In this document: in pieces, positions 1-55,861 of the stretch
Numbering within the stretch: the stretch's first letter is position 1
How the letters are laid out: every line of letters starts with the position of its first letter
Virus record (IMG/VR): IMGVR_UViG_3300036715_004471
Location: 124,001-188,000 of that record
Length of the DNA stretch: 64,000 nt
Direction: 5' to 3' (one strand)
Notes under the pieces: generated by a model
Databases searched by the model: none
What the model was told of the DNA's origin: nothing
Seen by the model: the letters and a program-made list of their open reading frames with translations, nothing else
Program-made: the position numbers and the translations under genes

Positions 1-423
1 CAACGGGGATGGGTCGCTCTCCGTTAGGGCGCGGTAGCTATCTGCTACCGCCTCGCGGTGTCTTGCGACCCGCTTGACTACGCCAGCCGGGAAGGCTGGA
101 TGGGAAGCGCACCATTGCGCTTCGCCCGGCTAGCTCATCAGGGAGCGTCGCCGGTATCTCACCACAATTAGTGCGATTGATGGGCTCCCCCTATTCTGAT
201 TGATGTGCTCAATCTCCCCTAGCTCGGGGCTCGGCAGCCCTCGGCATCGATCTTGCATCTTGCAATCTTCGTGCCAGTCGTATCAGTCCATTCAATATAT
301 TGGTCCGACCTTTGCATATTGCAATCTCTAGACCATATCGTCAATTCTGTGAAAACAGAATTGGTCTTGGCATATTCAATGCAATATGCAAAGAGAGTGC
401 CAAGGTAAAAAGGAAACGCGAAA

Positions 424-443
424 GGGGAGCCCGAAGGCTCCCC
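424..443 (-). terminator. Intrinsic terminator hairpin (8-bp GC stem, UUCG loop on minus strand)
   Basis: ggggagcc-cgaa-ggctcccc. On the minus strand it is followed by a T-rich run and lies just downstream of ORF 463..672. Confidence 0.7.
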
Positions 444-462
444 GCGACTGGCACGGATCTTG

Positions 463-672
463 CTAGAGAGAAGCAATCGCTAGCATGGCAACAAGCTCCG
501 CGCGATCATCAGGATCCCAACCGGGGAGATCCAGATCCCAGAACCATGCCGGGGCGAGATCGCACAGATTCGACGTTACCTCGTCGAAAGCCGCATCGTC
601 ATCGGTCGACGTGGCATGGTAAGTGTAGAGCGCGGCGAGGATATGTTCGACGGTGGTGCACATACTCCACAC
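463..672 (-). CDS. Hypothetical small acidic protein
   Basis: 69-aa ORF in the GC-rich segment followed by a terminator hairpin; true start uncertain. Confidence 0.5.
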   Translation of the reverse strand: MWSMCTTVEHILAALYTYHATSTDDDAAFDEVTSNLCDLAPAWFWDLDLPGWDPDDRAELVAMLAIASL

Positions 673-780
673 GCAAAGCGCAGGAAGATGGGCATTGGAT
701 GGGTTTTACAGTCAGAACGGAAGCGCCCGTTCTCCCCCTCGACGGGGAATATTGGGGCGCTTCCTAGTTGTCGCCGCCCC

Positions 781-969
781 TCAGTTGATGGGGTCGATCC
801 CGTCGAAGTTGACTTCCTTCTCGCGCTCCGCGAGGGTCAGCCGCTCGCGCTTGGCACGCCGCTTGTCCTTGCCGCGGATCTCGCCCGTGAGCTTGGCATC
901 GGCGCGCATGTCGCGCGTCTGCGACTTGATCAGGGAATCCAGCTCCGAACCCGACGAACGCTTCTTCAT
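781..969 (-). CDS. Hypothetical small basic protein (MKKRSSGSELDSL..., 62 aa)
   Basis: Part of ORF 781..1056. The ATG at 969 is preceded by a GAGGGA RBS-like sequence, and codons are GC3-rich. Confidence 0.6.
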   Translation of the reverse strand: MKKRSSGSELDSLIKSQTRDMRADAKLTGEIRGKDKRRAKRERLTLAEREKEVNFDGIDPIN

Positions 970-1122
970 GATGATCCCTCGAATCCTTCGAAAGATTGGT
1001 TGCTTAGAAACGCCTGGGACGGAAAAACCCGTCTTCCAAGCGGGTTGTCCAGGCATCGAACCGAAGCCAGTAATCGAGCAGCTTATCCAGCATACCCGAC
1101 GCCTGGCTCTGGTCTGGATGGG

Positions 1123-1398
1123 TCACAGCATCCCCGCCGCCGAGGCGACGACGAGCACCACGGTCCCGACGATCCACACGATGAGACCCTTCCACTGTCC
1201 GATCCAGATCGACACCACAGCCAGTGCCGTCCCGGCAATGGTGATGGGTACCTCCTGCGGGGCGAGCGACATGCGCCTGGCGCCGAGCAGCACCATGAGC
1301 GCGACCAGCGCCACCGTGCCGAAGAACCACACCGCGATACCCTTGCCCTTGCCGATGAAAAGGGCGACCAGATTGAGAGCGAGAACGAGGAGAGCCAT
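1123..1398 (-). CDS. Hypothetical small membrane protein (about 4 hydrophobic segments)
   Basis: Part of ORF 1123..1545. The ATG at 1398 is preceded by GAAGG, and the product is very hydrophobic. Confidence 0.6.
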   Translation of the reverse strand: MALLVLALNLVALFIGKGKGIAVWFFGTVALVALMVLLGARRMSLAPQEVPITIAGTALAVVSIWIGQWKGLIVWIVGTVVLVVASAAGML

Positions 1399-1557
1399 GA
1401 ACTTGCCTTCGGTCAGTGCAGGATGGGTTGGACCACCAGCGCGGCAGTCGCCGCGGCATAGCCAATGCCACCGAGCCAACGCCAGCGGGCGGTGAAGCCA
1501 TAGAAGCCCACCGCCCAAACCAACATCAGAGTACAGGGGGTCCATCTTGGATCTGGG

Positions 1558-1725
1558 CTACTTGCCCACCACGATGGGCTCCTGCCCCTCCCTCTGCCAG
1601 GTGCCCGACCCACCAGCGATGGTAGTCTGCATCAGGAGGCTCGCGGCGCGACGGCGCGCGATGGGGCTGTCCTCGACCTGGACGGTGGTGGTCTTGCCGG
1701 CGATGGTGGTGGTGAGGGTGATCAT
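1558..1725 (-). CDS. Hypothetical 55-aa protein (MITLTTTIAGKTTTVQVED...), not in the ORF track
   Basis: AGGAGG RBS 7 nt upstream of the ATG, GC3-rich codons, TAG stop. Confidence 0.6.
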   Translation of the reverse strand: MITLTTTIAGKTTTVQVEDSPIARRRAASLLMQTTIAGGSGTWQREGQEPIVVGK

Positions 1726-2443
1726 GGTCCTGCCTCCTACCTCTGGTAGATGGGCTTGGGATAGACGACCGTGATCCCGACCCGCTTGGAATAGCGAACC
1801 AGCTCGCCAAACGTGGCTTGTGCCCGACGTTCACCGTCTTTGGTGTCATGATGGGCACTGATCGCCCAGTAGCTAGGGCTGATCTGAGCCGAAACCACGA
1901 TGATCGCCTTGGGTGACATAAGTATTCTTATTTCCTTACCTTGATGGGATAAAGAAAGAAAAAAGATGTCGATGGGTAGTCGAAGAGTTTTCTTTTCCCT
2001 TTTACTAACACCTTGAGAGATGGGTCGAGGGTTAGGGGCAGCAGTTCGGGTGGTACGGTGGGGCTGTAAAAGGTGGGTGATGGGTCCGCGTTGGCACGAC
2101 TCTTGCCTCCCAAATAGGGGTAATCTAATAACTAATTACATCTAAAAATGTATATGCGACACATTAATACAAATACAAAGCAAATAATCAACATTAAACC
2201 ACCCTATTTGAAATTAAATGGGGTATTTCATCTTTCTATCAATTACATTCACTCAGAATATAATCAAGCATCTTATCGCATTACATAAAGAACAATTCTC
2301 AAGATTGAGCATATAGTTCTTAATGAGCTAAGTGGGGATGGTTATGGGAGGTTGGTGGTTAATCTTGCGTTTAATCGGCATATAATAATTGGGATATGGC
2401 TTGGCGACATTTTTCGCACTAGCTATATAAGGAGATCTTCTCG

Positions 2444-3175
2444 ATGAAATTCTCTTCATTCTTATTCAGGGTCATATGTGGTTTGCTGTTATTGGTAACT
2501 ACGGCAAACTGTTGTTCAGGTTTTAACCATAGAGCGGAGGCGCCGGCGGGCAAACCGGCATATTTATTAGATAGCACGGTAGCGTTGGTGACGGGGAGTC
2601 CTGTTAATGAGTTTCAATATTACACATATTGTGCTGGGGTATGGATTTCTCCCGATCAATTTTTGACGGCGCACCACTGTATTATTCATGAAGAATATGA
2701 AACTAATATGATGGGGAAGATGGTTAGGTTTAAGACTCGTCGTGAAGTGAGTATTAGTAAGAATGAATTAACGGTGAGTGATCCGCATTATGGAGTAGTA
2801 GTAGCGATAGATTCTTTGCATGATTTAGCTTTAGTTAAGTCTGTAGATTTGGGATTGGAGCATTCTGTGGCAAAAATCAAGGAATCTGCTGTAGAGGTTG
2901 GGGAGGGAGTTAAGATAGTGGGGCACACTAGTGGATTAACTTATACTTATATAGTTGGGGTGGTATCAGCTATTAGGGTAGATTTCCCTGAGGATGGGGA
3001 TCATTATTTTCAGGTTTCGACGCCGGGGTATAAGGGGAATTCTGGTGGTGGATTATTTGATAATGATGGTAATTTGATGGGAATCTGTTCTAGTTTATTT
3101 AGAGGGGCGCCGAATGTAATTTTGTTTATTCACAAGGATGAGATGGTTAAGTTTTTGAGAGAGAATCAGATATAA
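2444..3175 (+). CDS. Trypsin-like (S1) serine protease with N-terminal signal/lipoprotein peptide
   Basis: Catalytic motifs TAHH, DLALV and GNSGG; hydrophobic N-terminus with Cys; AAGGAG RBS. Confidence 0.85.
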   Translation: MKFSSFLFRVICGLLLLVTTANCCSGFNHRAEAPAGKPAYLLDSTVALVTGSPVNEFQYYTYCAGVWISPDQFLTAHHCIIHEEYETNMMGKMVRFKTRREVSISKNELTVSDPHYGVVVAIDSLHDLALVKSVDLGLEHSVAKIKESAVEVGEGVKIVGHTSGLTYTYIVGVVSAIRVDFPEDGDHYFQVSTPGYKGNSGGGLFDNDGNLMGICSSLFRGAPNVILFIHKDEMVKFLRENQI

Positions 3176-3498
3176 GCTTTTAGTTTGGATAATCTTACAG
3201 CCACATCTTTCGCATTATTGGGGGAGATGTGGTTTGCATTTGGTAGATTATCCACGATAATTTTATCTTTTAGTTCTAGGGAATAGGTATTAGAGTTTAT
3301 GGCGAGGATTAGGTTATAGCCGGCTTGGGAGTCATCGGTTAATTCGAAATCTTTATTGAAATAGAAAGCCAGGACGAACAATTCATCTTTGAAGAAGCTA
3401 TGGTAGACTTTGCAATGTTCGCAGAAGGCGATATTAGGGATGAATGAGGTATTGAGTCTTTGTTCACAGAAGACGCAGGAGCGATTGAGAGTTTTCAT
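3166..3498 (-). CDS. CxxC zinc-ribbon family protein with C-terminal tag (RLSKLKAYI)
   Basis: CVFC and CEHC motifs; shared C-terminal motif. Confidence 0.75.
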   Translation of the reverse strand: MKTLNRSCVFCEQRLNTSFIPNIAFCEHCKVYHSFFKDELFVLAFYFNKDFELTDDSQAGYNLILAINSNTYSLELKDKIIVDNLPNANHISPNNAKDVAVRLSKLKAYI

Positions 3499-3884
3499 AG
3501 GAAAACCTTTTGATTCATGATACGTTTAACGAAGTCTTTAGCATTTTGCGGATTTATGGATGGGGGATGATCCATTTTAAAAATTGATATGGATTCAGCA
3601 TCAAGATATACTTGGGTTCGTTTAACTTCCAGCATTTCCAAGGTTTTATGAATAAGATCGATATTGATTAGGTATCTTGGGAAAGAATATTGATTTATTA
3701 GGAAACCAATCATTACTAATTTGCCGGGGACTCCATTGGGGGAATTTTCCTGATCGACCACATGGTTAACTTGGATTGGACAGTTATTACAATAGTATAT
3801 TTTATTGAAATCGAAGTATGTATTTCCGCTGCCCATATTATGGTTACAGAAGATGCAATTGAACTGTGTGGGGAAGAGGGTCAT
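3495..3884 (-). CDS. CxxC zinc-ribbon family protein with C-terminal tag (RIMNQKVFL)
   Basis: CIFC and CNNC motifs; 4-bp start/stop overlaps with neighbours. Confidence 0.75.
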   Translation of the reverse strand: MTLFPTQFNCIFCNHNMGSGNTYFDFNKIYYCNNCPIQVNHVVDQENSPNGVPGKLVMIGFLINQYSFPRYLINIDLIHKTLEMLEVKRTQVYLDAESISIFKMDHPPSINPQNAKDFVKRIMNQKVFL

Positions 3885-4207
3885 GAGAAAGCTTTTTGCT
3901 TTAATAAACGCTTTAGATATTGATGTGCTCCTTGTGGGGAGAGGTTAGGAACTTGGGACAATTGCAGAATGCACCGGTCTTTTCCATCTTGTTTATAGAG
4001 GGCGCAGCGATTTAAAATTGTATTTATATTGATGGAATATCGGGATCCTTTTTCATAAAGGAGGAAATCAAAGCTTATGGGGGTTTGATTACGGATATCG
4101 AAATTGTAAGAAACTTGAATGGGGCAATGCAAGCAAGTTAAGGAATAGCAGGGATATTTGGTATATACGCGATTAGATAATTGATTATTACAAAACTGAC
4201 ACTTCAA
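3881..4207 (-). CDS. CxxC zinc-ribbon family protein with C-terminal tag (RLLKQKAFS)
   Basis: CQFC and CLHC motifs. Likely TTG start at 4207 after GAGG; the ORF track extends it to 4321. Confidence 0.7.
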   Translation of the reverse strand: MKCQFCNNQLSNRVYTKYPCYSLTCLHCPIQVSYNFDIRNQTPISFDFLLYEKGSRYSININTILNRCALYKQDGKDRCILQLSQVPNLSPQGAHQYLKRLLKQKAFS

Positions 4208-4230
4208 TGGGCAACCTCTTTGCAGGGTTA

Positions 4231-4551
4231 TTAGGTAAATAGTAAATACAGGGAAAGCTTTTCTTTTAACTTTTCCAATTTGGGGAAATCCAGCTCCATA
4301 ATTTTTGGAATAGCCAGACACATTTTAGGATCTGTGGGCTCATAATAATAGAATGAGCATTGTTTCTCGAAATTAACCTCAAGGGAAGTATAATTATCGA
4401 GATAAACAACAATATGTTCCACTTTTTTATTGGTGGATTTTAATGAGAAAAAGTGGGCGGCGCTTTTGGCGCAGGTGCGATTGACACTTTGGTTAAAGGT
4501 TCTATTTTTTAATTTATTGTAGCAGATGGGACAGTGCGAGAGATCCTGCAT
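4231..4551 (-). CDS. CxxC zinc-ribbon family protein with C-terminal tag (KLSLYLLFT)
   Basis: CPIC motif and later C...H; shared C-terminal motif. Confidence 0.75.
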   Translation of the reverse strand: MQDLSHCPICYNKLKNRTFNQSVNRTCAKSAAHFFSLKSTNKKVEHIVVYLDNYTSLEVNFEKQCSFYYYEPTDPKMCLAIPKIMELDFPKLEKLKEKLSLYLLFT

Positions 4552-4572
4552 ACAGTATATATAACTTGAATT

Positions 4573-4926
4573 TTAGCTGAAGATAATGCACAGCTTTAAT
4601 TTGTTATACAGAGATTTTAAGTTAGAAAAATTTGGTTCAAAAAATGGAAGGATAATGGGATTATTTTCTATCATCTTACCATGCCAACGAGTGATAGAGA
4701 TATATTTCTTGTCTAAATTCCAACTTATCTCGTGTTGGTAATCGCCTCCCACCAGATAGATATCTCTAATGTTATCATCTTCGCCTGGAACAGATTCTAT
4801 ATACAGGCGATGATTTAATCTTCTCTTACAAGATTTGCGCAAGACAGTCTTGTTTGCATTAAGAGATGCCAAGTAATCATTTACCATTGGATCTCTACAT
4901 ACAGGGCACAAAGAGGGCATTTGCAT
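4573..4926 (-). CDS. CxxC zinc-ribbon family protein with C-terminal tag (KLKLCIIFS)
   Basis: CPVC motif and CKRRLNH; shared C-terminal motif. Confidence 0.75.
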   Translation of the reverse strand: MQMPSLCPVCRDPMVNDYLASLNANKTVLRKSCKRRLNHRLYIESVPGEDDNIRDIYLVGGDYQHEISWNLDKKYISITRWHGKMIENNPIILPFFEPNFSNLKSLYNKLKLCIIFS

Positions 4927-5695
4927 GTCTTTTTATAATCGCGTAAATTGTTGGAATAGATACTTCAAATAGCGAAGATAGTTCTTTATTTTTCATACCT
5001 TCATTGTAGTATTTTATCAATTCTATTTCTTTATCAAAAGAAAGTTTAATTTTTGATTTCGACATTTTTTGTCTAGTATCATCTGATTTTGCTTTACCTT
5101 TTTTAGGGATAGACATTTTTTCTTTTGTCTCTTCGCTAAGTTTTGATCCTAGTTTAGCTTCGGACATTGCTTGTCTAGTATCTAATGATCTTTTAACTCC
5201 TAGATTAGACTGAGATATTTTCTTTTTCCATTCTTCAGTTTTGGGGCGTCCTTTATGAGCTTTAGAAGCCTTCTCTCGCCACTCATCTGAATGTGGATTC
5301 AGTTTACCAATATTACTTTCAGAAATCTTCTTTCTTGAATCTTCAGAATGATGCTTTCCGTACATTGGCTGTTGTTCAGCGGGCAATCCAGTATTCCAAG
5401 CGGAATCGCCACCAGGTGCCAGATTATATCCCTTTTCTTTATTACGACTATCATATTGAATGATTAGTTGCTTTTCTGCCTCATTAGCATCTTCTTGTGT
5501 TAATGAGGTACAAATCACTTCATAAGTAAAATTATCAATCCCATACTTATTCATTGCTTTATGAATATATTGGTTAGTTTTGTCAGGATTTCTTCCAAAA
5601 TACTTATGCTGACGCCATCTTTCTTTTTCCTTATTAGACTGACCAATATAAACTTTTCCATTTAGTTGGTTTGTTATTTTATACAGATAAATCAT
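4895..5695 (-). mobile_element. Free-standing GIY-YIG homing endonuclease with NUMOD3 repeats
   Basis: IYLYKITNQLNGKVYIGQS, GYNL motif, and repeated (H)SE(D/E)xxxK(I/M)S units. Confidence 0.9.
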
Positions 5696-5733
5696 AATAT
5701 CTCCTCACAGAGTATATTATACTATGCGTATAA

Positions 5734-6081
5734 TTAAGAAAAAAGTAAATAGGTTTTGATTTTTTGTTTGATCTTATCGAGATTAGACAAATCAGTAGAG
5801 ATGATGCTTGGCACCTTGATGGGACGACGTTCGTTTGCTTTAGTCCACAAACTAGTGGTGTTATCTTGATAATTGAATTGTGCAAAGAACTTGTGGGCGC
5901 CGTCTTTGATTCTCAACTTCATAATTATTAATTCGCCGGCAGCCGATATTCTTTTTGCCAATAGATGATCCTCTTGTCGACAAACTAAATCCACATTCTT
6001 GGATGCAAAGACAGATTCTTCTGTTAATTGAGCGTTACAAATTGGACAAACATTGGACATAAATACCTTTGTATTACACAT
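5734..6081 (-). CDS. CxxC zinc-ribbon family protein with C-terminal tag (KIKTYLLFS)
   Basis: CPIC motif and CRQEDH; shared C-terminal motif. Confidence 0.75.
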   Translation of the reverse strand: MCNTKVFMSNVCPICNAQLTEESVFASKNVDLVCRQEDHLLAKRISAAGELIIMKLRIKDGAHKFFAQFNYQDNTTSLWTKANERRPIKVPSIISTDLSNLDKIKQKIKTYLLFS

Positions 6082-6108
6082 AAAACGCTATATATTTATA
6101 GCAAATGA

Positions 6109-6542
6109 ATGAAAGTCATTATGATAAGATATCACTCCAACAAAACTATTCTTAATTTTAGCGATGGCAAAATCTCTCGCAGTAGACTTAGAAAATCACT
6201 AAGCACTACCAAATTTATTCCATCTATCTATCAAAGCGAAGATTTGCGTTTTTCTTATGTAGAGAATGAAATTATCGTAGGAATGAAATTATCGTAGGAA
6301 TATATAAGATACGCATCCTACTTAATTGGGAAAAGGAAGGGGAATTCCTTCGCAATTACGGCGGATTTCAAATTCGAGTTTATCAAGGCAATGAAGAAAA
6401 AGAGATTGATTTAGAGTCAGACTGTCGATTTAACTTTCAGTCTTGGCTATCATTAAACCATAATTCAAAATTGAAAATCAAACATCTTGCAGAGATTATT
6501 ATCTATTGTCAGCGCCTCAATAAACTAAAAGTTTTCTTATGA
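6109..6542 (+). pseudogene. 138-aa tagged protein (ends RLNKLKVFL) frameshifted by a 17-bp tandem duplication
   Basis: Removing one copy of gaatgaaattatcgtag restores an open frame to TGA at 6540-6542. The C-terminal part resembles ORF 10903..11442. Confidence 0.8.
6264..6297 (+). repeat. Perfect 17-bp tandem duplication (gaatgaaattatcgtag x2)
   Basis: Read directly at 6264-6280 and 6281-6297. Confidence 0.95.
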
Positions 6543-7157
6543 AAATAAGATTAAAGTATTCATTTTGTTAATGAATGTCTGCTTGTTTTTGAACTTGGAC
6601 AAAGGTTGCAATGGCATTTTTAAATCGATAGGTTCTTCGTATTTTATGACTCTATCGGTTGGGACAGAGGTTTTAGCAACCATTAAAATTGACTCCTGAT
6701 TATCCCAATTTGATGTAAGAGAATACATCTTATCTGGCTCTTCAATCAGCAGAAATTCTTTACGTATTGACAATGGTTTTAATATCTTTTTATCAAGATC
6801 AAAAAGCATACTATGAGACCGTATGTAAGAACCACAACGAGTACATTTACTAGTGGCATACATTATATGCTCGGATAGATAATCTGTCAAGGCATTAATA
6901 TCTGAAATAATTTTGTTGCTTTTGTGTAAAATTCTCAAGTTAAGAGTGCCGTCAGAATAATTAACTTTCAAATCCATATCCACCATTTGGGGCGTAACTA
7001 CTGGATGAAGAATAATACCTTTTCCAGCCTTTGTTATAGGATGTTCCGCCATTGGATCATCAAGTTTCCTAGTAATAACCCTAAAAAATGTATTCTCTTG
7101 ACAAGAAAAACAAGGATTATTATAGGTGATAAAATCTTTAAGCGTTAGAAGTTTCAT
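6537..7157 (-). CDS. Long-form CxxC family protein with C-terminal tag (KMNTLILFS)
   Basis: CFSC and CTRC motifs; shared C-terminal motif. Confidence 0.75.
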   Translation of the reverse strand: MKLLTLKDFITYNNPCFSCQENTFFRVITRKLDDPMAEHPITKAGKGIILHPVVTPQMVDMDLKVNYSDGTLNLRILHKSNKIISDINALTDYLSEHIMYATSKCTRCGSYIRSHSMLFDLDKKILKPLSIRKEFLLIEEPDKMYSLTSNWDNQESILMVAKTSVPTDRVIKYEEPIDLKMPLQPLSKFKNKQTFINKMNTLILFS

Positions 7158-8242
7158 TATTCTTTATTGTGCAAATAAGCCATGATGAATTGTTCAATAT
7201 CTCCATCTAAAACCTTATCAGCATTTCTCACTTCGCAATCTGTACGATGATCTTTAACCATTTGGGATGGAAACAAAACATAAGATCTAATCTGATGACC
7301 GAATGAATTATCCTGCATGCTGGTGAAATACTTTTCTTTATCAGCGTTTTTCTTTTTCATTTCTACTTCATAAAGTTTAGCTTTCAACACTTTCATAGCT
7401 ATTTTGCGATTAGTGTGTTGATCTCTTTCTGATCTAGAATTGATTACGATACCAGTGGGAAGATGCTTTAATCTAACGGCGCTTTCTACCTTATTAACAT
7501 TTTGACCACCTGCACCGGATGCGCGCATAGTAGTAATTTCAATATCTTTGTCATTGATTTGAACATCAATAGTATCTTCGATATCTGGGAGTACAGCTAC
7601 CGCAGCAAAAGAGGTATGACGAGCATCGCCAGCATTGAAAGGAGAATTTCTTACTAACCTATGAACTCCAGCTTCTCCTTTCAGATAACCATAAGCATAA
7701 GGTCCATTAATGCGAATAGAGACTGAATCGGTACAAATTCCACCGTGCTCTTCTGATGGTTTCATATCCAGAAGCTCTATTTTGAAATTGGACATATCGG
7801 CATATCGAGAATACATTCTTAAAAGCATAGTAGTCCAATTTGCAGCTTCTAATCCGCCTGCACCAGCATTGATAGTTAAAATGGCTGGACTATCATCCAC
7901 AGGATTATTGAGCATTTGTTTGAATTCAAAATCACATAAGTCTTTATGGAAATCTTGAATTTGATTTGCTAATCCATCCAATTCTTCGGGAATAGATTGT
8001 TGACATTCTATATAAAAATCAGTTTGATCTTTGAAGAAGGAAAGTTTGCTTAACAATTCTGATACTTTTTGACGCTCTTTTAATGTAGCGGCGGCTTCTT
8101 TAGGATTATTCCAGATATTAGAATTATTAATAGCATTATCCAATTCCATTAATTTGTTTTTGTTAATGGAAACGGGTATCATCTGATGCAAATAGTCAAT
8201 TTTCTCTTTACATGATTCAATTAGTTGGGTTGTTGTTTTCAT
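7157..8242 (-). CDS. prfB: Peptide chain release factor 2
   Basis: SPF recognition tripeptide (VRNSPF), GAGGQNVNK and [10 protein letters not shown]. Likely ATG at 8242 after AAAGGA; no internal frameshift. Confidence 0.95.
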
Positions 8243-8301
8243 AATGGGCGTCCTTTCAAGGCACACAACGCAGGTAATATTTGTAGGGCGCCGATGGGAC
8301 G

Positions 8302-9021
8302 TCAAGACATAATGACCCAGGAGTCAAGCCTGTTGAATAATCTTTCTTTATCTTCAAAGTTAATTCGATTATTAAGCAGTGGCATTTCTCTTTCTAAGAG
8401 TTTGGGCTCAAAATCTTCTTTTGAAGCTTCCTCATCGGTAACAGTATAATGATGAAAAACAGTTTTCTTCTCTTCATTATCCAATACGATTACGTAAACT
8501 TTTTCCAAATTCCCAGTTTTATTCTTGACCACATAATATTCATCTCTGTTAATAATTCCATTGTCTTGAATATACTTTACTAATAGTTGTTGTTTTGATT
8601 CATATTCATCAAGTTTAATTAATGGGGTGGATCGATAATAACATCCATAATAAATATCAATTTGATGATCATATCCCAAATCACTTATCGCTCGTGGATT
8701 ACACAGATAATAAAAGTACAGACTTTTCTGATCTTTTGCCATTTTCTGTGCAGATAAAGTATTGAAATTAGCTACATAGTTATCTCCATCTTTTTTAAGA
8801 AGCATAACTATTTCTTGAGATTTTTTAGTATTTCCAAAACCAGAATTAGGCTTATTCTTAGAGTATTCATGCTCTTCAAACCTGATAGTATCATCATTTG
8901 ATTGAGACGCTTTAAAAAGCTTTTTAACATAATCTAATTCGGAACCTCCCCATTGCATATACAATGTAAGCGGTTCTTGACAAATGGGGCAAAGTTTATT
9001 GAAATTCAGGAAGTCTTTCAT
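8302..9021 (-). CDS. Long-form CxxC family protein with C-terminal tag (RLDSWVIMS)
   Basis: N-terminus [14 protein letters not shown]; variant of the tag. Confidence 0.75.
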
Positions 9022-9023
9022 AT

Positions 9024-9638
9024 TTATCCAAAATTAACGATTGTTTTGATTCTATTGAATACTTTATCTTTATTCTCTTGATCTATCTCTATCAAAGGCA
9101 AACTAATAGGTTTAGCATATTGCTTATTGGTCGTGTAAATATTAGTGGATAGTCTTATCATATCATTTTGAACCCAAAATTGGGAAACATTATAACACTC
9201 CCAATCAATCATAATAGGTTCGATTAAAGCACTAGCATGATCATTTACATTAAGTTTAAGATTGGTTGTTGTAATATAATATTTGCTGTAACATTTTTTA
9301 TTACAGCAATGTAACTCAACATTAACTTGAGCGTTTGTAATAACTCTTAATATCCCTATTAACTCAATATTAGCATCTATTAAATCATCTGCCTCATTGG
9401 CTTTTTCCATGTGAAAAAGATTAGAATTAACATCTATATGACAATTCTTATCAATGGATAAACTGGGAGAAGTGTATTTTACTCTAAATGAGAAAACATT
9501 GTTGATTAATCTAGAATTAATTAGCGGAAGGTTAATATTCCAGTAAGAACGTCCCTTCAAATAAGGAATTAAAGAATCTCCACAGATCGCGCAATGCGAC
9601 TTGATATCTAATAAATCTTTAATCTTACTATAAATCAT
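9024..9638 (-). CDS. Long-form CxxC family protein with C-terminal tag (RIKTIVNFG)
   Basis: CAIC and CCNKKC motifs; shared C-terminal motif. Confidence 0.75.
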   Translation of the reverse strand: MIYSKIKDLLDIKSHCAICGDSLIPYLKGRSYWNINLPLINSRLINNVFSFRVKYTSPSLSIDKNCHIDVNSNLFHMEKANEADDLIDANIELIGILRVITNAQVNVELHCCNKKCYSKYYITTTNLKLNVNDHASALIEPIMIDWECYNVSQFWVQNDMIRLSTNIYTTNKQYAKPISLPLIEIDQENKDKVFNRIKTIVNFG

Positions 9639-10205
9639 TTAGGAAAATGTGATAAGAGTTTTAATTTTGCGTAGCGTTTTTTCTTTATCTATCTTTCCAA
9701 AATTAATTAGCGGAAGTTCCGCTAATCCGCCCTTAGTAAGAGTATTATAAGGCGGCTCAATTATAATGTCAAGGACAATGGTTTTTTTATATTTGTAATC
9801 ATTAACAACTTTAAGATAAGATTTTTCATCTTTATGAAGTTTGAACGCTAATATTTCTAATTCTAGCGGACTAATGTATCCATCTTCGTTAAAAATCAAT
9901 GAAGAAGTTTTTATTAACAACCCGCACTCGCATGTCTTGTATATCTTGATTTTTTTAGAATTGAGGGCAACAGCAAGTTTTGATGATTCTTTAGTCCAAG
10001 AGGGAACTTGATAAGAATTATCTAATAAACCTATAGTAACATTTCTAAATAAAGACTGAGTAACCTGCAAGTTAATTTCATTATTTTGATATTCATAATT
10101 GAGCGACTCATTATGTTCACATCTAAAATCTTTGAAAGATAAGATTACAGGATCTTCGCACAGCATACATTGAGTATGAGATGTCATAAACTCAATCAAT
10201 TTCAT
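9639..10205 (-). CDS. Long-form CxxC family protein with C-terminal tag (KIKTLITFS)
   Basis: CMLC and CEC motifs; shared C-terminal motif. Confidence 0.75.
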   Translation of the reverse strand: MKLIEFMTSHTQCMLCEDPVILSFKDFRCEHNESLNYEYQNNEINLQVTQSLFRNVTIGLLDNSYQVPSWTKESSKLAVALNSKKIKIYKTCECGLLIKTSSLIFNEDGYISPLELEILAFKLHKDEKSYLKVVNDYKYKKTIVLDIIIEPPYNTLTKGGLAELPLINFGKIDKEKTLRKIKTLITFS

Positions 10206-10206
10206 A

Positions 10207-10857
10207 TTAATCTTCGTAAAACTTTTCGAAAACTTCTTTGGTTAAACCGGCATCAATCAAGATTGGACGATCATCTTTGGTTCCCCAAGAAGATATTCTT
10301 GCAATATCTCCGGGCATCAATTTGAACTTTTCTCCAACACTTTTCATTTCCTTATAGATGTCTGATTTGGAAATCTCTTCGAAGTGCTTAGGTTTACTTT
10401 TGGAGGATTCAGAGACATCTTTAAGACCATATCTGATAGCATCTCCAAAGTCATTGAAATCTATATCAGTCATTTTCTCAAAATCCTTTTCTGTAATCTT
10501 TTCTAAATAATGAGTTTCAAGCCAAGAAAAATTTTTGGCTTGACTAATAATCTCATTAAGATACTTAGATTTCATCTTAGGATTTGATTCCGCTTTATTT
10601 TGAGCGATTCCTTTATCATTCTTAGCCATCTTGATAATAGTTTTATCAGGAGTCTCATACACTATTCTAGAAGAACCGGAAGAAAGATGTTTTAAATTTT
10701 TCTCAGCATATTTAGTTCTAGCTTGATAGGTTTCTAATTTCTCGAGATTCTTTAATACAGTTTTGAGATTAGATGAATCTGCTGGCAACTCTTCCGATTC
10801 TTGAGTGGCAAGAGAGTAAAATATATCAACCAATCTAATAACTCTGTTTATTCCCAT
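10207..10857 (-). CDS. Protein-kinase-like fold protein
   Basis: SSGSSRIVY glycine loop, IIKMA lysine, QNKAE helix-C glutamate, GDIARISSWG catalytic-loop-like segment, LIDAG (DFG-like). Confidence 0.65.
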   Translation of the reverse strand: MGINRVIRLVDIFYSLATQESEELPADSSNLKTVLKNLEKLETYQARTKYAEKNLKHLSSGSSRIVYETPDKTIIKMAKNDKGIAQNKAESNPKMKSKYLNEIISQAKNFSWLETHYLEKITEKDFEKMTDIDFNDFGDAIRYGLKDVSESSKSKPKHFEEISKSDIYKEMKSVGEKFKLMPGDIARISSWGTKDDRPILIDAGLTKEVFEKFYED

Positions 10858-10902
10858 GCAGTAAATACCAACTTATTAATACCGGGTTATATTTTAAGTA
10901 AT

Positions 10903-11442
10903 ATGACAAATAGATTGAGCACTCAAGAATATTACGATCTCATTAAAAAATTGATTGAACAGCAGTATACTGATGATTCAGAACCGGAATCAACCACATC
11001 TTATTCTGATGGGTGGATTCCTGCTTCACCTGAAATTAAACAAAAAATGAAGCTACTGGCGGATGAAGGAACTGTTGATTTAACTAATGTAAAAAGCAAC
11101 AAAATTAAAGAACTTATTATTCAATCCAAAAATAAGAGCGTTAAGAGTGGAATCAAAATTGGCGATTTTCTAATAAAAATTACACGTTCTGAATGTTACA
11201 ATCCTGATATGTCAGACTTAATTGTTGACATTTGCGTTTATGAAGAACAACATAAAACCAAATCAGGGGCACCGGCTAAATTATTATTCAAAATAGATAC
11301 TATTAAAGATAGTAGATTCACACAATGTTCTTGGAACAGTTATTTTAATCAATTCAAATCTGCTAAAAATGTACCGATTAACATATTGGTAGAAATTGTT
11401 AGGTGGCTCCGGGCGGTTAAAAAATTAACTGCATTTCTTTGA
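10903..11442 (+). CDS. Hypothetical protein with C-terminal tag (AVKKLTAFL), paralog of 6109..6542
   Basis: Likely ATG at 10903; shares an ID...D.RF....W...L.EI...KL..FL pattern with the frameshifted gene. Confidence 0.75.
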   Translation: MTNRLSTQEYYDLIKKLIEQQYTDDSEPESTTSYSDGWIPASPEIKQKMKLLADEGTVDLTNVKSNKIKELIIQSKNKSVKSGIKIGDFLIKITRSECYNPDMSDLIVDICVYEEQHKTKSGAPAKLLFKIDTIKDSRFTQCSWNSYFNQFKSAKNVPINILVEIVRWLRAVKKLTAFL

Positions 11443-11588
11443 TGATCGTACATACGGATCATGCGCACGGGCGAGCAGTATGTCAAGGTCTCTTATCTTA
11501 AAAGATATTAAAAGGTACGCCCCCACTATATGGTCTCATTCCCCCTATAAGATCCCCCAAGTTTTTGTCGAGAGACAGCTCACAAAAA

Positions 11589-11620
11589 GAAAAAGAATCA
11601 GAGCGCTCTGATTCTTTTTC
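11589..11620. repeat. Perfect 32-bp palindrome with no loop, between convergent genes
   Basis: gaaaaagaatcagagc|gctctgattctttttc. Confidence 0.9.
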
Positions 11621-11701
11621 GGTAATTACCAACCGTCATATATTGTTGTATATTCTATCGAACTTACTAACCTGATAGTGCCCTTACTTAACTGCCTTTT
11701 A

Positions 11702-12178
11702 TTAAATCAACTGGTTTCCTGACAATATTTGTGCTAATCCTGATGATGTTATGATATCTTTTTGTAATGTAGGATCTGCATGTGCTCTATTATCTTGATG
11801 TTCTGCTCTCCATCTATTCATTGCTGATTGAGTTCTTGGTCCGAAAACACCATCTGCTTTACTGCCGCTCATACTATCTGGATATAATTTGATTAAAGCT
11901 TTTTGTAATTCTGGATTAATGCGTGATCCATGAGAAATTGGTTTATATACTTGTTCTGAATGTTTCTCTTTAGCTTCTTGAGCTGGATATGGAAGTGGTT
12001 TATTACCTTTTATTTGAGTAGAAGGTAGCTCTACTCCAAAACCAGGATTAAATGAATTTAGTTCATATCCACCATGATCCATTTGTGCTAAGTTTTCAAG
12101 AAAAGCTCTTCTACCACCGTAGACAGCTAATCTTTCAAACAATTCTGCTTTTTTGAGGAGAGCCTTTGTGTCAACCAT
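11702..12178 (-). CDS. Protein with shared N-terminal leader and C-terminal peptidoglycan-binding-like domain
   Basis: LQKALIKL...ADGVFGPRTQSAMNRW resembles the PG_binding_1 signature DGxFGxxT. Confidence 0.65.
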   Translation of the reverse strand: MVDTKALLKKAELFERLAVYGGRRAFLENLAQMDHGGYELNSFNPGFGVELPSTQIKGNKPLPYPAQEAKEKHSEQVYKPISHGSRINPELQKALIKLYPDSMSGSKADGVFGPRTQSAMNRWRAEHQDNRAHADPTLQKDIITSSGLAQILSGNQLI

Positions 12179-15207: not shown

Positions 15208-15482
15208 TCAAAACTCCTCATACTAAGATCTTAAGAATAATTGAAGGATTTCGTAGACTAGTGGATAATGTTTGTTCTTATGATCCATCATCTATTAATG
15301 AAATCATAGGAGATTTTAATATCTTCAATGAAGCGTGCGATGAATTAAGAGATGAATTAACAGCTAAAAAAAACTCTCTTGATGAAGTTGAAGAATTAGA
15401 AAGCAAGCAAAAGATTATTCAGCACGTTGATGAAATGAAGCCTATTATAGAGAAAATGATGAGTTTGAAAGCGTTTTGGTAA
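15204..15482 (+). CDS. Helical hypothetical protein with C-terminal tag (KMMSLKAFW)
   Basis: Operon position; shared C-terminal motif. Confidence 0.7.
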   Translation: MIKTPHTKILRIIEGFRRLVDNVCSYDPSSINEIIGDFNIFNEACDELRDELTAKKNSLDEVEELESKQKIIQHVDEMKPIIEKMMSLKAFW

Positions 15483-30846: not shown

Positions 30847-31089
30847 TTAATTTCTAGCAACCTTCATTTTAACAGCAATTATATTCTGCTCAGCCACATA
30901 TTCTTTGTTTCTTACCTCTACAGTATGAACTGGATTCTTACATGGAAAAAGTTCCTCAAATTTTCTTATAGTTTTCCAGGAGAATTTAGACAATTCTTCG
31001 TCAATTAATCTATTCGCCCTACGAGTCTCGCGGTGCTCGTCGCCATATTTTTCGTCATCTTCAGTATAAATTACAACATCATCAACCAT
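30847..31089 (-). CDS. Hypothetical protein
   Basis: Likely start MVDDV after AAGGTG. Confidence 0.55.
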   Translation of the reverse strand: MVDDVVIYTEDDEKYGDEHRETRRANRLIDEELSKFSWKTIRKFEELFPCKNPVHTVEVRNKEYVAEQNIIAVKMKVARN

Positions 31090-31445
31090 GTCAGCACCTT
31101 GTTTCTTATATTTGTTGGAGATATTGCCAAACACTCATCATAGGAATATATAATTCTACCACAAATCAAATTGGTTTTGTTTTTCATCAAATCTAATTGA
31201 ACAGTATAAGATTTTTCATTAATTTCTGTATCAATTTCTAATTTGATCAGAATATCATCTTTACCAATATACTGACATTTACAATTTTTGTAGTAATAAT
31301 AGCATTTGGTTTCGGATAAAAGATGAGCCTTAATGTCTTCTTTGCAATACAAACAATTAAAAAACTTCTCCCTTTTCTCATGTAAAAAAGATCTATTTAA
31401 TTGTCCTTGACTAGAAATGAATACTAAGTCAGATTTTTCCGACAT
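31071..31445 (-). CDS. CxxC family protein with C-terminal tag variant (KVLTWLMML)
   Basis: CLYC and CKC motifs; ISPTN before the tag matches ISPNN/INPQN in 3166..4207. Confidence 0.7.
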   Translation of the reverse strand: MSEKSDLVFISSQGQLNRSFLHEKREKFFNCLYCKEDIKAHLLSETKCYYYYKNCKCQYIGKDDILIKLEIDTEINEKSYTVQLDLMKNKTNLICGRIIYSYDECLAISPTNIRNKVLTWLMML

Positions 31446-55854: not shown

Positions 55855-55861
55855 CGTTTTC

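What the first reader, a model, noticed from the sequence alone, without database searches (positions are those of the whole stretch)
3166..10205. Array of ten divergent CxxC zinc-ribbon paralogs with variable middles
Seen: ten minus-strand genes start with CxxC (CVFC, CIFC, CQFC, CPIC, CPVC, CPIC, CFSC, CPIC, CAIC, CMLC) and carry further Cys/His ligands. They end with a Pro-containing segment (ISPNN, INPQN, LSPQG, IPKI, LPFF, VPSI, MPL, LPLI) before the tag. There are two size classes, about 105-130 aa and about 190-240 aa, and an eleventh member lies at 31071. The middles share little visible identity. Inference: an expanded, fast-diverging family with conserved ends and a variable core, as expected for target-recognition modules in a host-phage arms race. 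The array is interrupted by a GIY-YIG endonuclease, RF2 and the opposite-strand frameshifted gene at 6109.
Basis: partly seen in the sequence, partly recalled or inferred. Interest (0 to 1): 0.72.

Follow-up and report, generated by a model that had tools for sequence, protein, structure and literature searches.

The report
Zinc-ribbon paralog array in jumbo phage
A giant uncultured phage carries a conserved tandem array of ten (17 genome-wide) small proteins from a large, unnamed family, each built from a zinc knuckle, a beta-sheet and an invariant C-terminal helix; their function is unknown, and they are old, selectively maintained paralogs rather than rapidly evolving arms-race genes.

Summary
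Ten minus-strand genes (3166-10205) each carry an N-terminal CxxC, a Pro-containing segment and a C-terminal amphipathic helix that ends ...ΦΦF-S. They come as six short (106-129 aa) and four long (188-239 aa) forms. HMM and profile-profile comparisons link them into one superfamily, with 17 members in this 446.5-kb genome. The group-B profile finds 786 unnamed clusters in metagenomes. No Pfam, PHROG, NCBIfam or PDB family matches.

AlphaFold models show a zinc knuckle, a 7-strand antiparallel meander and a C-terminal helix. Long forms add an N-terminal beta lobe.

The same array, with RF2 embedded, recurs in at least five related jumbo-phage contigs. Its core order is conserved and the distal run of short copies varies (7 to at least 21 members). 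dN/dS against a relative is 0.05-0.29 for all ten genes, including the middles. The "fast arms race" reading is therefore not supported, although these genes diverge faster than their neighbours.

The closest described thing is the ~35-copy zinc-ribbon expansion of Bacillus phage G (Iyer et al. 2021). It shares the knuckle and the organisation but has a different C-terminal helix.

Function is inferred only: non-enzymatic binding modules, perhaps binding nucleic acid.

The parts
3166..3498 (-). Short member, group A (110 aa; CVFC...CEHC; ends KLKAYI).
   Evidence: group-A HMM 6e-30. Ortholog L003 9445-9771, 74% identity, dN/dS 0.29.
3495..3884 (-). Short member, group A (129 aa; CIFC...CNNC; ends NQKVFL).
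   Evidence: A 2e-35, B 4e-3. dN/dS 0.08.
3881..4207 (-). Short member, group A (108 aa from TTG 4207; CQFC...CLHC; ends KQKAFS).
   Evidence: Start corrected from the ortholog and from the SD AAGAGG 7 nt upstream. A 6e-37, B 9e-4. dN/dS 0.15.
4231..4551 (-). Short member, group B (106 aa; CPIC..C..H; ends LYLLFT).
   Evidence: B 4e-23. dN/dS 0.08.
4573..4926 (-). Short member, group B (117 aa; CPVC..C..H; ends LCIIFS).
   Evidence: B 1e-21. 94% identical to the L003 ortholog, dN/dS 0.05.
4895..5695 (-). GIY-YIG/NUMOD3 homing-type endonuclease. It interrupts the array and is not a member. It is the only gene in the block that ends in TAG.
   Evidence: Pfam. It sits at a different place in relatives, with 44-58% identity. 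Stop codon.
5734..6060 (-). Short member, group B (108 aa from ATG 6060; CPIC..C..H; ends KTYLLFS). This is the modelled representative.
   Evidence: AF2 pLDDT 87.8; B 4e-34. dN/dS 0.08.
6109..6539 (+). Frameshifted remnant of an opposite-strand gene whose reading frame ends ...RLNKLKVFL. It is not a zinc-ribbon member.
   Evidence: tblastn to the intact 143-aa gene L002 2754-3185: 35% over 93 aa, E 1e-11, frame change near 6290. Absent in L003.
6537..7157 (-). Long member (206 aa; exactly four Cys: C16, C19, C105, C108; ends TLILFS).
   Evidence: AF2 pLDDT 74.7. Residues 95-203 align to the whole group-B module (hhalign 92.7%). dN/dS 0.17.
7157..8242 (-). Class-I release factor of RF2 type (361 aa, SPF and GGQ motifs, no programmed frameshift). 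It is embedded in the array.
   Evidence: Pfam PCRF + RF-1. SPF and GGQ read from the translation. Same position in L001-L005 and L030. dN/dS 0.03.
8302..9021 (-). Long member (239 aa; CPIC; ends DSWVIMS).
   Evidence: hhalign to B 84% over the C-terminal 49 columns, and to 9024 and 6537 over the N-terminal ~25 residues. dN/dS 0.15.
9024..9638 (-). Long member (204 aa; CAIC...CCNKKC; ends TIVNFG).
   Evidence: hhalign to 9639 full length, 64%. dN/dS 0.12.
9639..10205 (-). Long member (188 aa; CMLC...CEC; ends TLITFS).
   Evidence: hhalign to 6537 full length, 94.7%. dN/dS 0.12.
31071..31445 (-). Probable dispersed member, group A (124 aa; CLYC...CKC; ends TWLMML).
   Evidence: Jackhmmer from 3881 recruits it. 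Group-A HMM E 2e-3.
10207..10857 (-). Context: conserved 216-aa gene immediately upstream of the array on the same strand. No family hit. It shows kinase-like motifs by eye only.
   Evidence: Present in L003, L004 and L006 at 65-88% identity. No Pfam match above cut-off.
10903..11442 (+). Context: divergent 179-aa gene with a similar C-terminal end (...KKLTAFL) but no zinc knuckle.
   Evidence: Conserved in L003, L004 and L006. hhalign to the family below 1%.
2444..3175 (+). Context: trypsin-like protease with a signal/lipobox-like N-terminus. It is a conserved neighbour at the distal end of the array.
   Evidence: Pfam Trypsin_2, 1.5e-16. Also beside the arrays in L003 and L031.

Best explanation
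Shown:
- The ten genes are real, selectively maintained members of one large, so far unnamed superfamily of small phage proteins.
- The basic module is about 105-125 aa. It has an N-terminal zinc knuckle (CxxC, plus a second C..H or CxxC about 20 residues later), a seven-strand antiparallel beta-meander, a Pro-containing turn, and a 13-residue amphipathic, Lys-rich helix.
- The chain always ends one residue after a hydrophobic residue, mostly ...Y-L-L-F-S.
- Long forms (about 190-240 aa) add an N-terminal beta lobe in front of the module. In the 6537 gene, one zinc site appears to be shared between the N-terminal knuckle and the module's knuckle.
- The paralogs are ancient. A core order (9639, 9024, 8302, RF2, 6537, 5734, 4573, 4231) is kept across a clade of ~450-kb uncultured phages from mats, sediments and lakes. 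It is followed by a run of short copies that expands and contracts.

Inferred:
- These are non-enzymatic binding modules.
- The zinc site and the C-terminal helix hold the fold. The helix covers the hydrophobic face of the sheet.
- The other face of the sheet carries alternating conserved Lys/Arg and aromatic residues and is the paralog-specific binding surface.
- I think the most likely ligand class is nucleic acid, so that members regulate or organise phage or host gene expression. Protein targets come a close second.
- Each paralog has its own conserved specificity, which would explain why all are retained.
For: Family and census:
- Family reality and in-genome links.
- 786 representative clusters at E<=1e-3, all full-length and about 105-125 aa, none named.
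- Invariant C, C, C, H and the consensus ...PDFsdLxKLKxKIKTYLLFS.
- The penultimate residue is hydrophobic in 153/153 representatives and the last is Ser in 113/153.

Fold:
- AF2 short form: pLDDT 87.8, pTM 0.78, strands 13-83, helix 94-106.
- AF2 long form: pLDDT 74.7.
- Both models hit more than 20 short and long uncharacterised proteins labelled 'uncultured Caudovirales phage' (TM up to 0.90).

Conservation:
- Synteny and copy number.
- Purifying selection: dN/dS 0.05-0.29, middle 0.15.

No enzyme:
- No enzyme family or catalytic motif appears in Pfam, PHROG, NCBIfam or PDB.

Binding face (inference):
- Strand patterns in the 153-sequence alignment alternate buried L/I with exposed K119/R121, F137/K139/N141 and W150 (read against the strands).
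- Median pI is 8.7 against 7.5 for other ORFs.

Literature:
- Iyer et al. 2021 (PMC7824862) proposed transcription-factor or structural DNA-binding roles for the analogous phage G expansion.
Against: - There is no direct evidence for any ligand.
- The basic bias is mild, and 8302 is acidic (pI 5.5).
- Seventeen or more specific regulators would be many for one phage.
- No structural match to a known nucleic-acid-binding fold was found. The best PDB matches are generic beta-meanders (Z<=6.9, TM<=0.45).
- The assignment of sheet faces is read from sequence periodicity, not from coordinates.
- A chain end fixed one residue after F is not required by a purely structural helix and hints at a docking role.
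- Zinc binding is predicted, not measured.
- One natural variant of the 4231 ortholog (L001) lacks the Pro and the second Cys of the knuckle.
Confidence: 0.4

Rival explanations
1. Host-takeover or anti-defence protein binders. Each paralog uses its variable sheet to bind and neutralise a different host protein, and the family diversifies in an arms race.
For: - Large copy-number differences between relatives: 7 to at least 21 per array, with the distal short copies gained and lost.
- Members diverge 2-3 times faster than RF2, p216 and p179.
- They are small, have no enzyme signature and are phage-restricted.
- The block contains a mobile endonuclease.
Against: - All ten have positional orthologs under purifying selection, middles included (dN/dS 0.05-0.29).
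- The core order is conserved in phages whose RF2 is only 59-76% identical.
- No member was compared with any anti-defence library. PADLOC, which holds defence rather than anti-defence models, was not run.
Confidence: 0.25
2. The invariant C-terminal helix with a fixed ...ΦΦF-S-COOH end is a docking or targeting tag. It would be a common handle that brings many different binding modules to one hub, such as a host or phage machine or the membrane, by analogy with F-box/PRANC adaptor families or C-terminal membrane-targeting helices.
For: - The chain ends exactly one residue after the hydrophobic residue in 153/153 representatives that are no more than 50% identical to each other.
- The tail is the most conserved segment of the family.
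- A similar end occurs on proteins with no detectable relation to the zinc-ribbon module: p179, genome ORFs 332948, 333458, 351478 and 386209, and the L002 143-aa gene. hhalign of p179 to the family is below 1%.
- The helix pLDDT (77-80) is lower than that of the sheet (90+).
Against: - AF2 places the helix within a compact fold (pTM 0.78), and the hydrophobic periodicity fits packing on the sheet.
- The tail-bearing 'unrelated' proteins also look beta-rich before the helix. They may be zinc-less members that sequence methods miss.
- No hub was identified, and no beta-clamp gene was found in the genome.
- The phage G counterpart has a conserved helix that is not at the exact C-terminus.
Confidence: 0.2
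3. Virion-packaged internal or ejected proteins, or a structural/assembly multigene family. This would be analogous to T4 internal proteins or phiKZ inner-body paralogs, which share a terminal targeting element.
For: - A shared terminal element combined with variable bodies.
- A conserved trypsin-like protease sits next to the array.
Against: - The protease has a signal/lipobox-like N-terminus, which suggests export rather than prohead processing (inference).
- The array lies with RF2 and small regulatory-looking genes, not with the large structural genes at 51859-62971.
- No proteomic data exist.
Confidence: 0.08

Closest known systems
[quoted passage not shown]
   Same: - A giant phage (498 kb) that is also the nearest cultured relative by the tubulin homolog (22.8% identity).
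- I counted 36 copies.
- Both short (100-106 aa) and long (180-220 aa) forms occur, and the short module forms the C-terminal half of the long ones.
- There is a long tandem array, gp447-gp474.
- The first knuckle has the same CPICxxxL motif, followed by a second knuckle, beta strands and a strongly conserved C-terminal helix.
- hhalign probability is 90-92%, but the confident alignment covers only 18-25 columns around the first knuckle.
- Function is unknown there too. The authors guessed specific transcription factors or structural DNA-binding proteins.
   Different: - The C-terminal helix has another sequence (I-x-YWKENDRYLxKIL) and is followed by variable extra residues, instead of ending at ...F-S.
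- Sequence similarity does not extend confidently beyond the zinc knuckles.
- The structural match of my short model to phage G Gp166 is weak (TM 0.33, E 0.027).
- In phage G the long forms make up the big array. Here the short forms do.
Uncharacterised proteins of 'uncultured Caudovirales phage' in BFVD (UniProt A0A6J5R... series)
   Same: True structural and sequence relatives of both the short and the long forms: TM 0.90 at 31% identity for the short form and TM 0.80 at 29% for the long form. More than 20 entries match.
p32/MAM33/gC1qR-type fold and other single-sheet beta-meanders (OspA, LolA/LolB-like)
   Same: A run of antiparallel strands with a C-terminal helix laid on one face. These entries recur among the weak hits for both models.
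   Different: - Scores are in the range of unrelated folds (Foldseek E>=0.08, TM 0.42-0.45; VIA Z 6.0-6.9 short, <=4.9 long).
- p32 has no zinc knuckle, is acidic and is trimeric.
- A homodimer prediction for the short form gave no answer either way.
RING finger first knuckle (RING2, BRCA1)
   Same: A CPIC-x3-L motif. The weak PDB sequence hits come only from this motif (E 0.009-0.5).
   Different: Only four conserved metal ligands are present instead of the eight in a cross-brace, and the rest of the protein is a beta-meander.

Membership tests
Zinc ribbon (fold class) | Two knuckles supplying four Cys/His ligands. | tested here: met
   C, C, C and H are invariant or nearly so in 153 representatives. 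Groups A and the long forms use a CxxC-type second knuckle. 6537 has exactly four Cys.
Zinc ribbon (fold class) | The knuckles sit on beta-hairpins. | tested here: inconclusive
   In the AF2 model, the second ligand pair (C27, H32) flanks the turn between strands 23-28 and 32-38. The first knuckle (C5, C8) lies in a coil before strand 13-16. No coordinates were available for inspection.
Zinc ribbon (fold class) | Zinc is actually bound. | not testable with these tools
   Needs metal analysis of purified protein.
Phage G zinc-ribbon expansion (Iyer et al. 2021) | CPIC-type first knuckle and a second C-x3-C/H knuckle. | tested here: met
   hhalign A1 against A4: 89.5% over 18 columns. Phage G module against group B: 91.9%, E 7e-7.
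Phage G zinc-ribbon expansion (Iyer et al. 2021) | Conserved C-terminal YWKENDRYLxKIL helix. | tested here: not met
   The window family has ...KLKxKIKTYLLFS at the exact C-terminus instead. The profile alignment does not pair the two helices.
Phage G zinc-ribbon expansion (Iyer et al. 2021) | Tens of copies in tandem arrays, with short forms and long forms that carry the module at the C-terminus. | tested here: met
   Phage G: 36 matches, and the gp447-474 array. Here: 17 per genome, 10 in the array, and 6537 residues 95-203 equal the module.
Phage G zinc-ribbon expansion (Iyer et al. 2021) | Homology over the whole module. | tested here: inconclusive
   The confident alignment is limited to the knuckle region. 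The structural match to Gp166 has TM 0.33.
Any Pfam / PHROG / NCBIfam family | Score above the family cut-off. | tested here: not met
   Best Pfam hits reach 10-20 bits against cut-offs of 23-30. PHROG E>=1e-3. NCBIfam found nothing relevant.
RING finger | Eight ligands in a cross-brace. | tested here: not met
   Only four ligand positions are conserved. PDB hits are limited to the first knuckle, E>=0.009.
p32/MAM33 fold | Seven antiparallel strands flanked by an N-terminal helix and C-terminal helices; homotrimer. | tested here: inconclusive
   TM 0.42-0.45 and Z 6.0-6.1, within the background range. The short form has no N-terminal helix. Oligomer prediction was uninformative.

The most novel reading that the evidence does not exclude
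The invariant C-terminal helix, with the chain ending exactly at ...ΦΦF-S-COOH, is a portable docking tag. A clade of ~450-kb phages would then encode a repertoire of 10 to more than 20 different zinc-ribbon/beta-sheet recognition modules, plus a few unrelated proteins with the same tag. All would be plugged into one common hub, possibly the translation machinery, given that the array is built around a phage RF2. That would make it a phage-encoded adaptor system with no described bacterial-virus counterpart.
Probability: 0.15. Interest if true: 0.8.

Novelty: new variant of a known kind. Interest (0 to 1): 0.45.

Why it matters
Giant phages carry large blocks of unexplained small genes. This block proves to be one coherent family.
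- It is very widespread in metagenomes: 786 clusters at 50% identity from one subfamily profile alone.
- It has a confidently predicted fold with no solved relative.
- It has a sharply defined signature and a conserved genomic position around a phage release factor.

The work gives Pfam-style family definitions: a short module, a long form and a C-terminal signature. It links the family to the only comparable case in a cultured phage (phage G), where experiments are possible. It replaces an arms-race story with a testable one, namely many old, individually conserved binding specificities on one scaffold. If the fixed C-terminus proves to be a docking tag, it would be a new organising principle for phage accessory proteins.

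Tried and rejected
- DNA similarity to known phages found only chance-level short hits.
- tblastn of the short member against 50,697 phage records found nothing.
- The search for related loci with the ortholog alignment found nothing in viral contigs or metagenome contigs.
- Foldseek against PDB and AFDB clusters, VIA-align wide search, the ESM Atlas structure search and the Atlas feature search gave only generic beta-meander or sub-threshold hits.
- Homodimer prediction for the short member scored 0.00: no support and no evidence against. It is not used either way.
- Clamp-binding idea for the tail: the genome has no DNA_pol3_beta homolog by Pfam, so there was no partner to test. T4-type clamp families were not searched. 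The idea was dropped as untestable here.
- Promoter and terminator scan: site counts are not above shuffles, so no operon map was drawn from it.
- RNA evidence: no RNA run holds the locus.
- Rfam on 1-12000 found no match.
- Assembly chimera as the explanation for the GC jump beside the array was rejected. The same jump follows the array in four independent contigs.
- Alternative genetic code for these genes is not needed. All ten are open under table 11 and end in TAA or TGA.

Full report
**1. Setting**

The window is bases 124001-188000 of a single 446,541-bp record, which IMG/VR classes as a provirus and CheckV rates 100% complete.

- From window position ~2.4 kb onward the DNA is ~33% GC and looks like a jumbo phage. 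It carries a tubulin/TubZ-like gene, class I ribonucleotide reductase, a DnaB-type helicase, a UvsW-like helicase and ORFs of 1331 and 2369 aa.
- The nearest cultured relative by the tubulin homolog is Bacillus phage G, at 22.8% identity.
- Near-identical DNA occurs in microbial-mat, sediment and lake metagenomes.

**2. The observation**

All ten minus-strand ORFs, their CxxC tetrads, their Pro segments and their hydrophobic ends are present as described.

Two starts are too long in a naive ORF call:
- The 3881 gene starts at TTG 4207, behind an AAGAGG ribosome-binding site.
- The 5734 gene starts at ATG 6060.

The sizes then fall into two classes: 106-129 aa (six genes) and 188-239 aa (four genes).

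None of the ten reaches any Pfam, PHROG or NCBIfam threshold.

The interrupting genes are:
- a GIY-YIG/NUMOD3 endonuclease;
- an RF2-type release factor (PCRF + RF-1; SPF and GGQ motifs read from the translation; no frameshift);
- a frameshifted plus-strand remnant at 6109-6539, homologous to an intact 143-aa gene in a relative.

**3. Are they one family?**

Plain BLAST gives only two sets of full-length pairs. In-genome jackhmmer confirms two groups:
- group A: 3166, 3495, 3881, 31071;
- group B: 4231, 4573, 5734, plus an ORF at genome 414753.

Profile-profile comparison of ortholog alignments gave these links:

| Pair | Probability | Extent |
|---|---|---|
| B and 6537 | 92.7% | whole short module aligns to residues 95-203 of the long protein |
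| 6537 and 9639 | 94.7% | full length |
| 9024 and 9639 | 64% | full length |
| B and 8302 | 84% | C-terminal 49 columns |
| A and B | 56% | |
| family and neighbouring genes p179, p216 (controls) | <1% | |

- HMMs of the subgroups find 17 members in the genome, with cross-hits between subgroups.
- In a relative with 21 copies, best hits alternate between the A and B models. This argues for a continuum.
- I therefore accept one superfamily. The A-B link and the position of 8302 are the weakest parts.

**4. Distribution**

- A profile of group B finds 786 representative clusters (E<=1e-3) among 1.84 billion proteins. The 150 best listed are full-length and 90-139 aa, mostly 105-125 aa. The ten clusters checked carry no informative name.
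- The consensus is M..CPICxxxL...C...H...(strands)...PDFsdLxKLKxKIKTYLLFS.
- In all 153 representatives examined, the penultimate residue is hydrophobic (F in 122). The last residue is Ser in 113. The chain therefore always stops one residue after that position.
- Members sit on very large contigs of 447.7 kb, 214 kb and 63 kb.

**5. Structure**

- AlphaFold2 on the group-B alignment gives a confident model: pLDDT 87.8, pTM 0.78. The zinc ligands are C5/C8 and C27/H32. Seven antiparallel strands span residues 13-83, and a helix spans 94-106.
- The long form is modelled less well (pLDDT 74.7). It has about thirteen strands and the same terminal helix.
- The 6537 gene has exactly four Cys (16, 19, 105, 108). 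One zinc site probably ties the N-terminal lobe to the module. This is inference.
- Neither model has a convincing match in PDB, AFDB clusters or the ESM Atlas. Best values are Foldseek E 0.03-0.08, TM<=0.54 and VIA Z 6.9.
- The only real matches are more than 20 uncharacterised short and long proteins labelled 'uncultured Caudovirales phage' in BFVD, with TM up to 0.90. The folds of the short and long forms are therefore related to each other and, on present evidence, are unlike any solved structure.

**6. Comparative genomics**

The array recurs in contigs from other samples:
- L001/L003 (JGI);
- L002;
- L004/L005 (a 447.7-kb ENA contig);
- L006/L007 (an NCBI MAG contig);
- L030;
- L031.

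- The core order is conserved: 216-aa gene, then 9639-like, 9024-like, 8302-like, RF2, 6537-like, 5734-like, 4573-like and 4231-like.
- After the core comes a variable run of short copies.
- Totals per array are 7 (L006), 9 (L004), 10 (window), 12 (L003), at least 11 (L031) and at least 21 (L030).
- The GIY-YIG gene occupies different positions and is only 44-58% identical, as expected of a mobile element.
- A trypsin-like protease is a recurrent neighbour at the distal end.

**7. Selection**

- Against L003, where dS is 0.5-1.6, dN/dS is 0.05-0.29 for the ten genes. For comparison, RF2 is 0.03, p216 0.08, p179 0.05 and the protease 0.28.
- Pooled over the ten genes, dN/dS is 0.105 for the first 25 codons, 0.150 for the middles and 0.108 for the last 22 codons.
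- All parts are therefore under purifying selection. The ends are only slightly more constrained between orthologs.
- At greater distance the members diverge faster than their neighbours. In L004, RF2 is 76% identical and p216 69%, while the family members are 31-48%.
- Overall these are ancient paralogs, each kept, evolving fairly quickly but not under detectable diversifying selection. Gain and loss are concentrated in the distal short copies.

**8. The C-terminal element**

- A 9-residue pattern taken from the tails sits at the exact C-terminus of 18 ORFs, against two internal matches in 107,691 positions. The pattern was derived from the family, so this is partly circular.
- Similar ends occur on proteins with no N-terminal knuckle and no detectable relation to the family:
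  - p179 beside the array, which is conserved in relatives;
  - genome ORFs 332948, 333458, 351478 and 386209;
  - the 143-aa gene of L002 and its remnant here.
- Two readings remain.
  - The helix may be the lid of the hydrophobic face of the sheet. Its i, i+3, i+7 hydrophobic spacing and the compact AF2 model favour this.
  - It may also, or instead, be a docking or targeting handle. The fixed chain end and its presence on other proteins favour this.
- I could not decide between them. The one complex job, a homodimer of the short form, gave no answer.

**9. Likely function**

- Nothing suggests catalysis.
- In the 153-sequence alignment, the central strands alternate buried L/I/V with conserved exposed residues: K119/R121 on one strand, F137/K139/N141 on the next and W150 on the third (read against the strands).
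- Exposed aromatic and basic residues on adjacent antiparallel strands are typical of nucleic-acid-binding sheets. They can equally serve peptide binding.
- The proteins are mildly basic (median pI 8.7 against 7.5), but not uniformly so.
- I therefore favour paralog-specific binding modules with nucleic acid as the most likely ligand (about 0.35-0.4). Protein targets in host takeover come second (about 0.25).
- The embedding of RF2 in the array is conserved in most relatives but absent in L006. I treat a functional link to translation as speculation.

**10. What is known**

- Iyer et al. [quoted passage not shown] They suggested these might be specific transcription factors or structural DNA-binding proteins.
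- I located that family: 36 matches in total. Short copies are 100-106 aa. Long copies are 180-220 aa and lie in the gp447-474 array, with the module at their C-terminus.
- It shares the CPICxxxL knuckle, the second knuckle, the strands-then-helix layout and the short/long/array organisation.
- Its conserved helix is different (YWKENDRYLxKIL) and is not at the chain end. The confident profile alignment covers only the knuckle region.
- I therefore file the window family as a new variant of that kind, not as a member of the phage G family.

**11. Verdict**

- The arms-race interpretation is only partly supported.
- The family is real, large, unnamed and structurally without a solved relative. 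Its function is unknown.
- Interest is moderate. It would be high if the fixed C-terminus proves to be a common docking tag.

Noticed in passing
window 1-2400; genome 1-126000; L004 12000-20342, L005, L006, L007: There is a sharp compositional boundary just beyond the distal end of the array. GC rises gradually from 37% to 62% over the first 125 kb of the genome, then drops to ~33% within about 2 kb. GC3 goes from 0.35 to 0.63, then to 0.2-0.3. The same jump (0.25-0.30 to 0.5-0.6) follows the array in four contigs from other samples, so it is not an assembly chimera. The cause is unknown.
   Followed up: partly
window 7157-8242; genome tRNAs at 15230-15303 and 320811-320884: The phage encodes an RF2 without a programmed frameshift, and 56 tRNAs including two with anticodon CUA. 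TAG terminates only 3 of 257 long ORFs in the AT-rich part (TAA 161, TGA 93). All seven same-frame ORF pairs (each of 100 aa or more) separated by a single TAG lie in the first 125 kb. This suggests TAG avoidance or partial reassignment. I did not establish recoding and used table 11 throughout.
   Followed up: partly
window 4895-5695: The GIY-YIG/NUMOD3 endonuclease lies between 5734 and 4573 here, but between the 8302-like gene and RF2 in L001-L003. Identity is only 44-58%. It is the only gene in the block that ends in TAG, and it overlaps the start of the 4573 gene by 32 nt. It behaves like a mobile homing endonuclease.
   Followed up: partly
window 6109-6539 (+): A frameshifted remnant of a 143-aa opposite-strand gene that is intact in L002 (2754-3185) and absent in L003. 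Its last frame ends ...RLNKLKVFL, which resembles the family tail although the protein has no zinc knuckle.
   Followed up: yes
window 10207-10857 (-): A conserved 216-aa gene lies immediately upstream of the array on the same strand. By eye it shows protein-kinase-like motifs (a SSGSSRIVY loop, IIKMAK, GDIARISSWG, LIDAG), but no Pfam hit reaches its cut-off. It may be an atypical kinase.
   Followed up: no
window 9772-9744 and 6890-6862 (-): Two perfect TTGACA-17-TATAAT matches lie inside the coding regions of 9639 and 6537, upstream of the next genes. The first is conserved in L003 (about position 2400) despite saturated synonymous sites. It also encodes conserved residues, so this may reflect coding constraint.
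   Followed up: partly
L001 3994-4314 versus L003 7665-7985: In one of two nearly identical relatives, the 4231 ortholog reads HCLIF instead of HCPIC. It has lost the Pro and the second Cys of the knuckle. This could be a natural variant, a decaying copy or a sequencing error.
   Followed up: no
window 2444-3175 (+); L003 9772-10500; L031 4322-5230: A trypsin-like serine protease with a signal/lipobox-like N-terminus is a conserved neighbour of the distal end of the array in several relatives.
   Followed up: no
genome 332948-333976, 351478-351942, 386209-387252: Four further ORFs without an N-terminal CxxC end in ...KLLIFS, ...KLLVFT, ...LYIVFS and ...KFLVFS. None has a Pfam match. They may be zinc-less relatives of the family, or independent carriers of the same C-terminal element.
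   Followed up: partly
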